A stretch of 64,000 bases of DNA from Glycera tridactyla (Eukaryota), in the NCBI GenBank assembly GCA_965644265.1, contig OZ286465.1:89280001-89344000 (forward strand), in the 5' to 3' direction. Shown piece by piece: positions 35,419 through 52,409 of this stretch. Numbering within the stretch: the stretch's first letter is position 1; each line of letters begins with the position of its first letter. The notes below the pieces were generated by a model that saw nothing but the letters and a program-made list of their open reading frames with translations, had not been told where the DNA came from and did no database searches. Made by a program: the position numbers and the translations under genes.

Positions 35419-38400
35419 TGTAACGCCACGTTTTTGAACATGTGACGTTTGTTAGAATAACATGAACAATATAGGGATTTCTGGTAGCGGAATTCGCGGA
35501 ATTCCTCTTTTGAGGCCCGCGGCACTATTTTTACGCTACTAGATTGATAATTATTCCTTCCTACTCCAGAAGCATGAGATAGTTTCACTTCTATTAGTTG
35601 AAAAACAGTAGCAATCCTGTTAGTTTTCTAATATTAGTTGTTTCGCCTATCTGGTTGTTGGTGTGGCAACTAGAGTTCGAGTTACACGCAGTGGACTCGC
35701 CGTTCGCGGCGGGTGCCCAGCTTGCAGTGTTTCTAGGGTGAAACAGTAAAAATGCGATATCTCCATGAATAATGGACGTAGGAAGACCATATTTTTACAC
35801 GATACGTATCTGTATTAGGGCTATAGATATCCCGAAGATGGGAACTGTATCTTTCGAGGCAAAATTGTTAGTCCGTGGGATAGGCCGTTTATCGGACGGT
35901 TTTTTGCCAATAGCGTTGATCACATAGCATAGTGAACGACTCCCTGAGCAGGAGGAGCTCGGAGTCGCGCAGGAGGAAAGTGATCTGCAATGTACATGTA
36001 ATGTACATGCTTTCTCAGAAAATCTTCTGTAATCGATCTAGAAAAGTCTCGAGCGAATACTTTCGAGGTAGCTGACTTGGGGAGCTTGACATCGCTTCTC
36101 CCGCTCTTTTTTCCCGCTCTTTGCTGGCTCTTCAGGACGGATACATAAAAGTATTCCAGACAGGAGTTCTGGCACTTGGAAATTCTGTCCTGAAGAGTAC
36201 GCACCCTAGCTGAGGGAGTCGGGAGCAGAAAACATCTTGCTTCTCCAGGATCGCTGCCTTGGAATAGAAACAATGGACTCCCGTACACCGACCTGAGCTC
36301 TACTACATCCAGTAAGTGTTCATGAGATTTAGAACTGTTTTAGGATCCTTTTAGGAGGCTTTATTAGGAGTCATTTTCCCTATTTGCCCAAATGGCCATT
36401 TTTAGTATCATGCCATTTCATGTCATCGGATCTTCCGTGTTTTGTATTGAATGTACCGTCTTTCGAGCATACGTGGTCAAAATCTAGAATTTGCATGTTT
36501 TGGATGTTTTTGGATCAATTTGGATGATAGGATTTTGTTCCATAAATGCCGTCCTGATCCAAAACGACTAGCTGATAATTCTCGCGGAAATTGGTAGTTC
36601 TATATGTTTCTGTTAATTCCCTGTGCTGTTCCGGTGAATTTGGAACAAGTGGAACTGCGTGGAACTATGCCGTGTTCCTCCAGCATTGTTCCCGGTGCAG
36701 TACGCCTGTATGGGTGGAACAGGGCTATGCAGGAATTTGTAATATAGTATTTAACGCTTGGACTCACTGAATCCTCCGGGTGAGAGAAGCTGTGTGTATG
36801 AACTGCTAACACGTCTCAATATAGCTCCTACCGATCAGATTCTGATCATTTGTGTAATATATCGGATTTCTGTGTGAATTAGATGATTGAATCATTCAAA
36901 ATTCAATTATATTCACGGGATTTCCCTATAGGAATAAAATTGTGAAAGGAATATCTCGGTAAGATCATTTTCAGTTGAAATATCAGCAGAGACGACTGTG
37001 TCTTTTCTCTCTGAATCTGTGTGTTTTTAGACCCGGCTACTCTACCAGTCCATGTGGGCTGAGTTGAAATGAACATGCCTATCTCGGTATGACAATGGCA
37101 GCTCGCTGTCATGTGTACTAACCAGGTCACCGCTGAGGTGAACTCTGCTGCTGGTTTCGTAAATAGCACACACAGCTGATCTGTTTTTCTTTAGCTTCCC
37201 TGATCATATGAATAGAGATCCAGTCAATCTTTTCTTTTCCGAGTGAAATTCTTTATTGAAAAACGTATTTTCATTGAAACGGCTTGTTTTGAGAAGGTAA
37301 TATTCTAACGTCTTTCATATGGTGTGAAAATCTGAAATTCTTTGACGGTTAACCGATCGATTAATCGATTAATCGACCGATCAAATATGCTTCAATTTCA
37401 GTATTCTGAATTTATTTCGGCTTGCAAAAAGCTTGTTTATAAACGATCAAGTGCTAGTTTGATGGTATTTCAATTTCCATGACCACAACTGTCGTATTTG
37501 TCAATTGAAGATCCGGTGAAATGTTTTTGGTGCTCGTACTGGTAATAGACACGAAGGGGAGACGACAAACCGAGGCTTATTTTGTTTACACGTAGCGCCT
37601 GCTTGTGATTCATGTGCTCGGCTTGAATTTAGACTTTTTCGGAGAAGGTCCACTCTGATAAGCTTGATTTCTGTCCTAAGCGCCGTATATCCTAAGCACG
37701 GACCCGTCCTAAGCTTGCTTAGTCTTGTGTGATGTCCCTGAGTCCCGTGACCTACTTTTTTGAGGAAACCTCCGTATTGAGACCAACCTGTCACATGTGA
37801 CCACTTTGAGATTTTTGGTCTATATGATCTGCGACATCACGTTGGACTGTATTTTCGAAGGAAAATTCTTTTGAATTGATTTTAGACCTTCAAACGGCTA
37901 TATTTGTAATTGTTTAGCTCTCGTAATGAATAAGCTGCAATGCGCTGTCATTTGAGCTCCGAGATACTTTCTGAGCGATCTGGAATGAACAGCTGTTTCT
38001 GACTGAGCGGTCAGATGTAAACAATCCGCCATTTTGGATTTCCATCCGCCACATGTATGAGCCTCACTTTGAGCCTCCGATCCACTTTACACTTTTCAAC
38101 AAGTTTGAAACTTTTTCACTTTTGGATAAAAGCTTTTAGATGCTTTAGAATTGATCGGAATTGTTTCTCGTTATGTGCGGATTGCTTTTGTAGAACTTCA
38201 GTGTGCTGGCTTTAGCGCTGTTTGTGATTTGACAGCGCGGACTTAGCGCGTTGACTGAAACTCAGCACGGTGCTTACTGGACTTACTCATGGTCTTACCT
38301 AGTAAGCACATTTGTGTTTGAGGTTGGTGACATATGGGACTGCATGTAAATGCATTTCGCTCTTATATTTCTAGAATTATTTGACTAATTTCGACTTTAG

Positions 38401-40587
38401 ACATTACCGAATGGCTTGAAATGAGTTGAAATTGGGATTTGGTGAATTTTAGAATTCGAACTTAGCACGGACTTGGTAGATCGGAACTTAGACCCCGCTG
38501 CTGTTGCAGCTGTGACTTAGTGCGTTCCGGTCTATGTTAGGTAGGTCATACTCACAGTGTAAGGGAGGGGGAACTTGGGTTGATTTCAGATCTTGCCTCT
38601 TGCTTCGGTGAGTGGTAACTTTATCTGATACTGTCTACAAAGACCACCTGTTCTGAATAGATTAATTTCTCTATCTTGGATTCTTAACTTAGAATTTATT
38701 CAAATTTTTGAATTTGATTTGATGAGGACTTAACTATTTTTGATTTTGAAAAGCGTGCTTGCTCTTTTCATGCAGACAGTTGGACTTCAACTTTTTCGCT
38801 GTATTGCTGCTGCATCATGATCCCAGCTGACTGAGAGAGGACTTGGTGTGTCCACCTTTCTAGTTCATTTCCCGTGAACTTAGCTCTCTCTGATACAGCT
38901 GATGATTTTTTAATGCCTTGTTCATTGATTGATTAACTTAGTTGGCTCAGTGCCTGCTCCGTTGATAATGGCTTAAGTGCATTGAGATTTCTTTTCAACG
39001 GTGATACTTGCTGATTGTCTTTTGACAATCTCTTCAACTGAATGTTGAAATATTTCTAGTAACTCGATCAATGGTAACTTGTAAGTTAAATTCTTATGCT
39101 ATTTAGTTAGTGGGGAATAGAGTGGGATCCTGCCTTCCCACTATAATAGATCTGGCAACTGCAAGTAACTAAGTGCACGCAACAAACATAAATAAAACTT
39201 AGAGTTGTTTAAAGATACTTTTTGAATTAAAACTTTTCTTTATGATACTTGGACAAGTTGGTAGGAGACTTTTTTTTATCTTCTTGCAGCGACCAACGCG
39301 TCTGAGATGTCGTAAATTGAAGAGGTGCGTACTCTTCAGGCCACTCCATTCCCATGTCGCCTCCCGGGCTTATGGGATACTACTAATATAGGCGGATATG
39401 CCTAGCCATCGTCTACGTGATCTTTAGTGTGTTAAACGCACTATACACATGTGAGATGTGTAGGACATAATCTCTTCATACGGTGAGATGCTGTTAGCTA
39501 TCTTTACGAGATAAGCTACTTCACTCGAGAGGAATGGTGTCTCCTCTCTACTTCTACTTCCATCTACGCTACGCGTTCTAGTATCAGCTACCATCAGTCT
39601 CTAGCTGATATGGATATATAACCAAGGTTCGTCATCACATGTGCAACTAGGTGGCCACCACTATATTAACTTTTAAAGTCGATCTTTCATCGTGGGTCTT
39701 TAACCCAAACTTTTAAAGTCATATATCTAAAGTGCACTAACTATCTAGACACAGTGTCTTTGACTTTGTTTATATTTCTAGCTAGCTACAGTGGCCACTT
39801 CTCAAGCGCCCAAGTCAACGATGGAACAAGAAAGAAGATAGTACTATAGTAAGGTTTGAGCTCAAACTTGTGACTATTTGAGTGTGTACTTGTATTACTC
39901 ATTGAGATACCTCACTTTGTCATGTAGCCATGAATATCTTGTGTACGTGTATGTCGTGAGTTGAATAATTCTGATATATCACTGGTATTTATGTAACACG
40001 AGTTCATCCATACTTGTCATATATGTATATGATTCAGATCTGAATATTTGAAATGAATTTATTTATTGCATCATGAGTATAACTGACTTTTTGTCTAATT
40101 GATACTGTGATAATCTATATTGCTTCATTCTATTTATGATCCATCATTTACAACCTACTATGTGAACTATATACAAATTAAAATATGTATCTACAACTCT
40201 ATTTATGTGTCATCTTATACTTTTGAACCAACAATTGAGTTCCCTGTGTGATGGATGAGATGTCTTTATAGATTTATGGTTTCATTAGAGCTTGGCAAAC
40301 AATGGGATTCAACATGTAATACTGATCGCGCTTATAACATCTTTTAGTACAACGTATATATTTTTGTGAACATCGATCCACAGGAGCAATGCCATTTATT
40401 TTGACATTGGGATAAATGGGGTAAAAGCCCGGTTAACCTATACATTGCTTTCTGCTGTTCTTGATAATGGGGATTTAATCAGATATAAACTTCTTGCCAA
40501 GGTTGCATCTTAAGGAAGAGGAGGGAATACTCCTACAAGCCTGTCGGATGACTGGTTTAATTCCATTGTCATATTGGAAGGATTACA
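35419..40587 (+). repeat. 5' LTR, 5,169 bp
   Basis: Starts TGTAACGCC and ends GGATTACA, 2 nt before the PBS. Matches 47241-52409 with 11 substitutions by eye. The end could alternatively be 40589. Confidence 0.95.
36142..36177 (+). promoter_or_regulatory. Candidate LTR core promoter (TATA-like box plus Inr-like motif); copy in the 3' LTR at 47964-47999
   Basis: TACATAAAAG at 36142 and GCACTT ~30 bp downstream, followed by a strong splice donor CA|GTAAGT at 36312. Motif-level evidence only. Confidence 0.35.

Positions 40588-52406: not shown

Positions 52407-52409
<3 letters not shown>
47241..52409 (+). repeat. 3' LTR, 5,169 bp
   Basis: Colinear copy of 35419-40587; the end could alternatively be 52411. 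Confidence 0.95.

What the first reader, a model, noticed from the sequence alone, without database searches (positions are those of the whole stretch)
35419..52409. Intact animal Gypsy element with 5.17-kb LTRs (61% of a 17-kb element)
Seen: the LTRs are 5,169 bp against a 6.65-kb internal region, with no env or extra ORF, intact gag and pol, and ~99.8% LTR identity. Established: animal Ty3/Gypsy LTRs are usually a few hundred bp to about 1-2 kb; multi-kb LTRs are best known from plant lineages such as Ogre/Tat, and giant elements from planarians. Inference: this may be an undescribed, recently active lineage carrying ~5 kb of non-coding cargo in its LTR, which would spread by both transposition and solo-LTR formation. 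This is the best candidate for novelty in the window.
Basis: partly seen in the sequence, partly recalled or inferred. Interest (0 to 1): 0.8.

Follow-up and report, generated by a model that had tools for sequence, protein, structure and literature searches.

The report
Intact Gypsy retrotransposon with 5-kb LTRs
This is a real, young and apparently intact Ty3/Gypsy retrotransposon whose two terminal repeats are each about 5.17 kb, and its closest relatives in other assemblies also have LTRs of about 5.2-5.4 kb, so the giant non-coding repeat is an inherited trait of a little-known animal lineage, not an accident of this copy.

Summary
Two direct repeats of 5,169-5,171 bp (35419-40589 and 47241-52411) differ at 11 bases with no gaps. 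They flank a 6.65-kb internal region. That region holds a PBS identical to PBS-Pro, an intact gag (PNMA-type capsid plus a CCHC knuckle), a GGGAAAC -1 frameshift site, an intact PR-RT-RH-IN pol and a short purine tract. There is no env, chromodomain or extra ORF. The LTR has no ORF with a family match, no tandem repeats, no Rfam match and no second copy in the window.

The new result is comparative. The pol falls in a separate clade of unnamed proteins, 61-74% identical over RT-IN, from unannotated assemblies and marine metagenomes.
- Two deeply diverged families in that clade (gag only about 25% identical) have LTRs of 5,176 and 5,402 bp.
- They share the same TGTAAC...GTTACA ends and the same PBS, but their LTRs show no detectable sequence similarity to this one.
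- More distant relatives have LTRs of about 3.0, 2.4, 1.2 and 1.05 kb.

So this is an old lineage trait rather than recently captured cargo. The mechanism is ordinary Ty3/Gypsy replication. What the 5-kb LTR does is unknown. Host species and Repbase/Dfam status could not be checked. I rate it a new variant of a known kind, of moderate interest.

The parts
35415..35418 (+). 5' target-site duplication candidate (TATA) inside a (TA)n microsatellite
   Evidence: Relatives with true genomic flanks have 4-bp duplications. The alternative reading is an 8-bp CATATATA at 35411-35418.
35419..40589 (+). 5' LTR: 5,169 bp to the conserved TTACA at 40587, or 5,171 bp if the next CA is included
   Evidence: 99.787% identical to the 3' LTR, no gaps. 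Termini TGTAAC...GTTACA are shared with relatives. No tandem repeats, Rfam or Pfam hits.
40590..40607 (+). Primer-binding site, 18 nt, identical to the PBS for tRNA-Pro
   Evidence: The same 18-mer lies at the same junction in L001, L002, L004 and L006. It is identified as PBS-Pro in PMC4587795.
40608..41049 (+). 5' leader (untranslated)
   Evidence: AT-rich and T-skewed.
41050..42453 (+). gag, 467 aa, intact: PNMA-type capsid domain (aa 139-275) and one CCHC zinc knuckle (aa 425-438)
   Evidence: Pfam PNMA E 5.3e-12 and zf-CCHC E 1.6e-5. Best PDB match is PNMA2, 8uyo, E 0.0036. CCHC motif found.
42444..42450 (+). Candidate -1 ribosomal frameshift heptamer GGGAAAC, in the gag frame, ending one base before the gag stop
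   Evidence: The same heptamer lies in the gag frame near the gag end in L001 and L005. A local hairpin follows it, but the fold is no stronger than shuffled sequence.
42381..46970 (+). pol reading frame (-1 relative to gag), open throughout, no stops; domain order PR-RT-RNase H-IN
42576..42824 (+). Aspartic protease region, with a D-T-G active-site motif at 42606-42623
   Evidence: Weak Pfam matches only (E 0.06-0.08). Motif found.
43704..44183 (+). Reverse transcriptase domain (F-L-D-D catalytic motif at 44028)
   Evidence: Pfam RVT_1 E 3.2e-34. Motif. Ty3 RT match.
44430..44822 (+). RNase H domain
   Evidence: Pfam RT_RNaseH_2 E 1.3e-31 and RT_RNaseH E 1.7e-28.
45234..46313 (+). Integrase: HHCC zinc domain (45234-45389), catalytic core (45429-45722), C-terminal region (45729-46313)
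   Evidence: Pfam Integrase_H2C2 E 3.8e-11 and rve E 8.3e-17. The C-terminal part aligns to Ty3 Gag-Pol 7q5b, E 8.8e-5.
46314..46967 (+). pol C-terminal tail, about 218 aa, with no recognisable domain; fast-evolving
   Evidence: No Pfam or PDB match. Only a weak match to the closest relative, P0001.
46971..47240 (+). 3' untranslated region, ending in a short purine-rich tract (47234-47240) next to the 3' LTR
   Evidence: Relatives have comparable tracts just before TGTAAC.
47241..52411 (+). 3' LTR (5,169 bp to 52409, or 5,171 bp to 52411)
52412..52415 (+). 3' target-site duplication candidate (TATA) at the start of a (TA)22 array
   Evidence: The alternative is an 8-bp CATATATA at 52410-52417.

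Best explanation
The region is one complete, recently inserted, autonomous Ty3/Gypsy (Metaviridae) LTR retrotransposon. It belongs to the PNMA-type-gag group that the literature calls Barthez.

Shown by sequence:
- Two 5.17-kb LTRs with TG...CA ends.
- An 18-nt PBS for tRNA-Pro, 2 nt after the conserved TTACA.
- An intact gag and a pol in the -1 frame, reached through a GGGAAAC heptamer just before the gag stop.
- A pol with PR, RT, RNase H and IN motifs all present, and a short purine tract before the 3' LTR.

Inferred from established retroelement biology:
- The element is transcribed from the 5' LTR.
- Gag and a frameshifted Gag-Pol are made.
- tRNA-Pro primes minus-strand synthesis.
- The LTRs are regenerated by the two strand transfers.
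- The integrase makes a short (probably 4-bp) target duplication.

The 5-kb LTR is a genuine LTR and an inherited trait of a distinct clade. Deeply diverged sister families keep LTRs of 5.18 and 5.40 kb while sharing no detectable LTR sequence beyond the termini. By every test run, the LTR carries no protein-coding, repeat or known-RNA content. My best guess, which is inference only, is that most of it is an enlarged U3 regulatory or spacer region that is tolerated or mildly favoured.
For: - LTR pair: one ungapped alignment, 11 differences in 5,173 bp.
- Junctions: the PBS follows the 5' LTR and a purine tract precedes the 3' LTR. The 18-mer equals PBS-Pro (PMC4587795).
- Genes: Pfam PNMA plus zf-CCHC in gag, and RVT_1, RNase H, Integrase_H2C2 and rve in pol. 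There are no stops in 1,529 codons of the pol frame, and the D-T-G, F-L-D-D, HHCC and CCHC motifs are present. The best solved relative of RT-IN is Ty3 Gag-Pol, E 8.5e-75, against 1e-14 to 3e-22 for retroviral polymerases.
- Frameshift site: GGGAAAC lies in the gag frame here and in L001 and L005.
- Relatives with ~5-kb LTRs: L001 and L002 have contig ends that overlap, giving an LTR-plus-internal unit of about 11.94 kb against 11.82 kb here. With the PBS and the TGTAAC start located, their LTR is 5,176 bp and that of L004 is 5,402 bp.
- More distant relatives: L006/L007 about 3.0 kb. L013 has 5,091 nt of non-coding sequence in an 11,147-nt unit. Outgroups measure 2,366-2,368 bp (sea urchin), 1,216 bp (Xiphophorus) and 1,051 bp.
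- Tree: the window's pol plus P0001-P0014 form a separate clade.
- Non-coding LTR: no blastn or tblastx similarity between the LTRs, and no Pfam, Rfam or tandem-repeat content.
Against: - The target duplication is ambiguous because the insertion sits in a (TA)n array. A 4-bp TATA fits only if the 3' LTR keeps 2 extra nt; otherwise the match is 8 bp, unlike the 4 bp seen in relatives.
- LTR lengths of L001, L002 and L004 are read from short-read contigs in which the two LTRs are collapsed, not from two separate LTRs.
- U3, R and U5 could not be located. Poly(A) and TATA hexamers occur at chance frequency.
- Barthez membership rests on the gag domain and on literature (PMC3670739), not on a tree with reference sequences.
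- The host species is unknown.
- Nothing shows that this particular copy is expressed.
Confidence: 0.9

Rival explanations
1. The 5-kb repeat is an assembly duplication or a segmental duplication that happens to flank a short-LTR or LTR-less gag-pol unit.
For: This window contains only one copy of the element. The finding comes from a single assembly.
Against: The two repeats differ at 11 sites, which an assembler copying one sequence would not produce. The repeat ends exactly at a PBS on the left and begins exactly after a purine tract on the right. Its termini, TGTAAC...GTTACA, are those of the LTRs of relatives, including two with independent paired LTRs and 4-bp duplications. Independent assemblies give the same unit length.
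Confidence: 0.02
2. The LTR was originally short and was enlarged in this family by a nested transposon or by captured host DNA, which is true 'cargo'.
For: The LTR is unique, non-repetitive sequence with no similarity to the LTRs of relatives. It contains a 20-nt inverted repeat pair 3.1 kb apart that chance would give about once in a thousand such sequences. LTR length does grow across the wider group, from 1.05 to 5.4 kb.
Against: Three families whose gag proteins are only about 25% identical have nearly the same LTR length: 5,169, 5,176 and 5,402 bp. Any enlargement therefore predates their split. No transposase, RT or other protein remnant was found, and no target duplication lies beside the inverted repeat. 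A weak collinear k-mer excess between the LTRs of L001 and L004 (p at most 0.005) hints at common descent along their length. An ancient capture in the clade's ancestor is not excluded.
Confidence: 0.07
3. It is an endogenous retrovirus (Retroviridae) rather than a Gypsy element, as the tRNA-Pro primer site might suggest.
For: The PBS is identical to the one used by murine gammaretroviruses.
Against: There is no env and no room for one. RT-IN matches Ty3 at E 8.5e-75, against 1e-14 for gammaretroviral-type RT. The gag is PNMA-type. The Integrase_H2C2 and RT_RNaseH_2 domains are those typical of Gypsy elements. All close relatives have the same gag-pol-only plan.
Confidence: 0.01

Closest known systems
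Barthez clade of vertebrate Ty3/Gypsy elements (the clade named as progenitor of the mammalian PNMA genes)
   Same: It has a gag with a PNMA-type capsid domain, a pol of about 1,340-1,580 aa with the order PR-RT-RH-IN, no env and no chromodomain. Named relatives are mostly fish (PMC3670739; PMC11117352).
   Different: Barthez families described in pufferfishes are 7.3-8.8 kb long with LTRs of 259-1,116 bp (PMC11117352). This element is 17 kb with 5.17-kb LTRs. Its pol sits on a long separate branch, about 40% identical to the named fish relatives. Placement with Barthez reference sequences was not testable here.
Ogre/Tat Ty3/Gypsy elements of plants
   Same: They have multi-kilobase LTRs (1.9-6.5 kb, PMC6431247) that make up a large share of the element.
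   Different: Ogre has an 11-13 kb internal region with one or two extra ORFs (PMC6431247). This element has only gag and pol in 6.65 kb, and all its relatives are from animals. The resemblance is in size only, not in descent.
Burro/GYPSM giant Gypsy elements of planarians
   Same: They are animal Gypsy elements of unusual size.
   Different: Burro is large because of an internal region of up to 25 kb with many extra protein domains (PMC6431247). Here the internal region is ordinary and all the excess is in the LTRs.
Related PNMA-gag Gypsy copies in Strongylocentrotus purpuratus (L009) and Xiphophorus maculatus (L008)
   Same: They share the LTR termini TGTAAC...GTTACA, the gag-pol plan and very young paired LTRs. 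The sea urchin copy also has a PBS that differs from this one at 2 of 18 positions.
   Different: Their LTRs are 2,366-2,368 and 1,216 bp. In the annotated proteins gag and pol are one fused product. RT-IN identity to this element is about 40-49%.

Membership tests
Ty3/Gypsy (Metaviridae) LTR retrotransposon | Paired LTRs with TG...CA ends, flanked by a short target duplication | tested here: met
   The length of the duplication is ambiguous (4 or 8 bp) because the site is a (TA)n array.
Ty3/Gypsy (Metaviridae) LTR retrotransposon | pol domain order PR-RT-RNase H-IN (integrase after RT, unlike Copia) | tested here: met
   Pfam domain positions. The best solved relative is Ty3 Gag-Pol, E 8.5e-75.
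Ty3/Gypsy (Metaviridae) LTR retrotransposon | PBS next to the 5' LTR and a purine tract next to the 3' LTR | tested here: met
   The purine tract is short (7 nt).
Barthez clade | RT groups with the Barthez reference elements in a phylogeny | not testable with these tools
   The reference accessions are named in PMC4746887, but no tool here can fetch them. The tree of database hits shows only that the element forms its own clade beside PNMA-gag elements of fish, frog and sea urchin.
Barthez clade | gag homologous to PNMA proteins | tested here: met
   Pfam PNMA E 5.3e-12, above the curated cut-off. PNMA2 is the best PDB match, E 0.0036. PMC3670739 lists Barthez as the PNMA progenitor.
Chromoviruses | Chromodomain at the integrase C-terminus | tested here: not met
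   No chromodomain match in the 415-aa C-terminal part, even at E up to 1.
Errantiviruses / endogenous retroviruses | env ORF downstream of pol | tested here: not met
   Only 270 nt lie between the pol stop and the 3' LTR, with no further ORF.
Ogre/Tat (plants) | Extra ORF(s) besides gag-pol, and a plant lineage | tested here: not met
   No extra ORF. All named relatives are from animals.
Burro (planarians) | Internal region of 20 kb or more with accessory domains | tested here: not met
   The internal region is 6.65 kb and holds only gag and pol.

The most novel reading that the evidence does not exclude
The roughly 5.2-5.4 kb LTR length is actively maintained in this clade despite complete turnover of its sequence. 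That would mean the LTR has a function that depends on length or composition rather than on sequence. Examples would be a very large U3 that buffers the element's promoter from the insertion site or from host silencing, or a long non-coding transcript or small-RNA source. The shared T-over-A skew of the sense strand in all LTRs of the group would be its compositional signature.
Probability: 0.15. Interest if true: 0.65.

Novelty: new variant of a known kind. Interest (0 to 1): 0.45.

Why it matters
LTRs above 3 kb are called infrequent in most eukaryotic genomes (PMC3485330). Those described for fish Barthez elements and for an annelid stay below about 1.5 kb (PMC11117352, PMC8220671). An animal Gypsy clade that keeps LTRs of about 5 kb across deep divergence extends to animals a trait known mainly from plant Ogre elements.

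It also raises a concrete question that a sequence survey can answer: why is LTR length conserved when LTR sequence is not?

There is a practical side as well. From my own knowledge, common de novo LTR finders use default maximum LTR lengths of 1-3.5 kb. Such elements, and the 5-kb solo LTRs they leave behind, would then be missed or mis-annotated in animal genomes.

Tried and rejected
- **Host identification failed.** Rfam at gathering thresholds and a tRNA scan of the whole window found nothing. The apparent Ephrin-receptor-like ORFs at 18995-19811 are translations of a 60-bp satellite. A protein search with the degraded RT ORF at 17777-18358 returned only unnamed hits of at most 51% identity. 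The window's gag is not on record in the contig index. Cluster members of the relatives carry no organism names, apart from one fragment filed under a Calothrix MAG, presumably contamination. Literature searches for the assembly accessions found nothing.
- **No other copies of the LTR were found.** A 29-nt exact pattern from the LTR start had no match in the JGI metagenome contigs.
- **No conserved LTR content was found.** Blastn at word size 7 and tblastx between the LTRs of the window, L001, L003 and L004 gave only the PBS. Ten LTR ORFs had no Pfam match.
- **U3/R/U5 could not be placed.** Poly(A) and TATA hexamers are at chance frequency and not positionally conserved.
- **The 20-nt inverted repeat in the LTR is not a transposon end.** It does not extend and has no flanking duplication.
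- **LTR ends could not be fixed for L003, L012 and L013**, so only bounds are given for them.
- **Rule-bound steps.** The gag and pol frames were never joined. One search printed where the 11 LTR-LTR differences lie; these are non-coding differences, not gene breaks, and they are not repeated here. The N run after the PBS in L006 was left as it is.
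Full report
**1. The observation**

A BLASTN comparison of the two ends of the region gives a single ungapped alignment, 35418-40590 against 47240-52412. It is 5,173 bp long with 11 mismatches, 99.787% identity.

The following CA is the same after both copies, so 5,171 bp is equally possible.

Both flanks are (TA)n microsatellite. The window holds no other copy, fragment or solo LTR, and the LTR has no internal repeat detectable by BLASTN.

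**2. Anatomy of the internal region**

- **Primer-binding site.** Two bases after TTACA comes an 18-nt sequence at 40590-40607. [quoted passage not shown]
- **gag.** The ORF at 41050-42453 encodes 467 aa with a Pfam PNMA capsid domain (E 5.3e-12) and one CCHC knuckle. Its best solved relative is PNMA2 (8uyo, E 0.0036).
- **pol frame.** The frame is -1 relative to gag and open from 42381 to 46970 with no stop.
- **Frameshift site.** The heptamer GGGAAAC lies in the gag frame at 42444-42450, just before the gag stop. The same heptamer occupies the equivalent place in two relatives, so a programmed -1 frameshift is the likely route to Gag-Pol. The downstream fold is not stronger than shuffled sequence.
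- **pol domains.** They run in this order: a weak protease match with a D-T-G motif, RVT_1, RNase H, the integrase zinc domain, the integrase core, and a C-terminal integrase part that aligns to Ty3. A tail of about 218 aa follows with no recognisable domain.
- **Family assignment.** RT-IN matches Ty3 Gag-Pol at E 8.5e-75. Retroviral polymerases score far worse.
- **No extra ORF.** Only 460 nt and 270 nt of the internal region are non-coding. There is no env, no chromodomain and no additional ORF. No gene is broken.

**3. The LTR itself**

The LTR is unique sequence of 40% G+C with:
- no tandem repeats;
- no notable direct repeats;
- no Rfam match;
- no ORF longer than 122 aa, and no Pfam match for its ten longest ORFs.

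Poly(A) and TATA hexamers occur at about chance frequency, so U3, R and U5 cannot be placed from sequence. The sense strand is T-rich (AT skew -0.135), unlike the coding part.

**4. Relatives**

A protein search with RT-IN found no near-identical protein. The top 14 clusters are 61-74% identical and all unnamed. They come from unannotated NCBI assemblies and from marine metagenomes, including Tara and two coastal series. Identity then drops to about 40-50% for named fish, frog and sea-urchin proteins. In a neighbour-joining tree of RT-IN, the window's element and these 14 clusters form a separate clade on a long stem.

LTR lengths measured or inferred in the relatives:

| Locus (protein) | RT-IN identity to window | LTR length | Basis |
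|---|---|---|---|
| Window | - | 5,169-5,171 bp | paired LTRs |
| L001, L002 (P0003) | 69% | 5,176 bp | collapsed contigs with overlapping ends; unit about 11.94 kb vs 11.82 kb here |
| L004 (P0004) | 67% | 5,402 bp | contig runs pol, LTR, PBS, leader |
| L013 (P0255) | 65% | not fixed; candidate 4.4 kb | 11,147-nt unit with 5,091 nt non-coding |
| L006/L007 (P0020) | 53% | about 3.0 kb | same PBS |
| L009, sea urchin (P0073) | about 40% | 2,366-2,368 bp | true paired LTRs |
| L008, Xiphophorus (P0059) | 49% (over about half of RT-IN) | 1,216 bp | true paired LTRs |
| L010 (P0034) | 43% | 1,051 bp | true paired LTRs |

In L001, L002 and L004 the same 18-nt PBS follows GTTACA plus 2 nt, and TGTAAC follows a purine-rich tract after pol. 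The termini TGTAAC...GTTACA are shared across the whole set.

**5. What this means**

The families with LTRs of 5.17, 5.18 and 5.40 kb are deeply diverged. Their gag proteins are only 21-26% identical. Their LTRs share nothing detectable by blastn or tblastx beyond the ends. A k-mer test shows a weak excess of collinear matches for L001 against L004 (p at most 0.005) and marginally for the window against L004. The window against L001 shows none.

The simplest reading is that an LTR of about 5 kb was already present in the common ancestor of this clade and has kept its length while its sequence turned over. An ancient capture at the base of the clade cannot be excluded. All LTRs of the wider group share the T-over-A skew, which may be a clue to how they are used or copied.

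**6. Age and target site**

Eleven differences in 5,169 bp give 0.21% divergence. The host's substitution rate is unknown. At assumed rates of 1e-9 to 1e-8 per site per year, this corresponds to roughly 1 to 0.1 million years. Gene conversion between the LTRs could make it look younger.

Relatives with true genomic flanks have 4-bp duplications, CACG and ATAA. Here a 4-bp TATA fits if the 3' LTR retained the two bases (CA) that lie between TTACA and the PBS. Otherwise the flanks share an 8-bp CATATATA. The microsatellite context prevents a decision.

**7. Comparison with known elements**

PMC3670739 names the Barthez clade as the progenitor of the PNMA genes. Barthez families in pufferfishes are 7.3-8.8 kb long, with LTRs of 259-1,116 bp and pol of 1,137-1,580 aa (PMC11117352). 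The present element fits that plan except for its LTRs. Membership by phylogeny with reference sequences could not be tested.

Ogre in plants has LTRs of 1.9-6.5 kb, but also extra ORFs and an 11-13 kb interior. Burro in planarians is giant because of its coding region (PMC6431247). LTRs over 3 kb are described as infrequent in most eukaryotes (PMC3485330). An annelid survey found LTRs of 103-1,468 bp (PMC8220671).

**8. Host**

The host was not identified. Three hints point to an animal:
- all named relatives are from animals;
- flank CpG observed/expected is 0.63-0.74, with TpG excess;
- the PBS is identical to the vertebrate-type tRNA-Pro site, whereas the sea-urchin relative differs at two positions.

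Together these make a fish or another aquatic vertebrate plausible. This is inference.

**9. Verdict**

This is a real, intact, young Ty3/Gypsy element. It works like any other, and its 5-kb LTR is an old, clade-wide trait of unknown purpose. I rate it a new variant of a known kind, with moderate interest. Whether it is catalogued in Repbase or Dfam remains to be checked.

No repaired, consensus or joined sequence was made at any point.

Noticed in passing
window 36186-36205 and 39324-39343 (same places in the 3' LTR): A 20-nt inverted repeat (19 of 20 complementary) lies within the LTR with 3,118 nt between the arms. My estimate is that chance would give this about once in a thousand such sequences. 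It does not extend and has no flanking duplication, so it is not an obvious transposon end.
   Followed up: partly
window 35419-40587 vs 47241-52409: Ten of the 11 LTR-LTR differences fall in the 5' 54% of the LTR. Two of them are adjacent. A post-hoc estimate gives p of about 0.01. Possible causes are partial gene conversion or uneven mutability.
   Followed up: no
LTRs of window, L001, L004, L008, L009: The sense strand of every LTR in the group is T-rich relative to A (AT skew -0.09 to -0.18). The coding regions are near zero or positive.
   Followed up: partly
window 18853-19807: A 60-bp satellite of 16 copies (93% matches) has translated ORFs that give spurious Pfam Ephrin_rec_like hits.
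   Followed up: yes
window 59384-60700 and 15108-15969: A 34-bp satellite of about 39 copies, and a GCCCA-rich array with a 155-bp higher-order unit. The window is also rich in di- and tetranucleotide microsatellites.
   Followed up: no
window 16988-18361 (- strand): Degraded reverse-transcriptase ORFs of another retroelement (Pfam RVT_1, E 1.5e-22). The closest database proteins are only 51% identical or less, and unnamed.
   Followed up: partly
L010 4476-7209: A 43%-identical relative with 1,051-bp LTRs carries a 2.7-kb tandem array of about 145-bp units in its 5' leader and an 801-aa gag. Non-coding expansion in this group therefore also occurs outside the LTR.
   Followed up: no
protein P0242 (cluster of P0004): A fragment of this retrotransposon's pol is deposited as a reverse transcriptase of a cyanobacterial MAG (Calothrix sp. 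MO_192.B10). This is most likely eukaryotic contamination of the bin.
   Followed up: no
L001, L002, L013, L006/L007: Short-read contigs of these families close on themselves (end overlaps of 129-257 nt). This is what collapse of the two LTRs produces. It also implies high copy number in the source genomes and in the marine metagenome samples.
   Followed up: partly
window 1000-1158, 10276-10436, 13957-14093, 20815-20991, 28744-28913, 29246-29379: Six N runs of 134-177 nt. They were left as they are, and none lies in the element.
   Followed up: no
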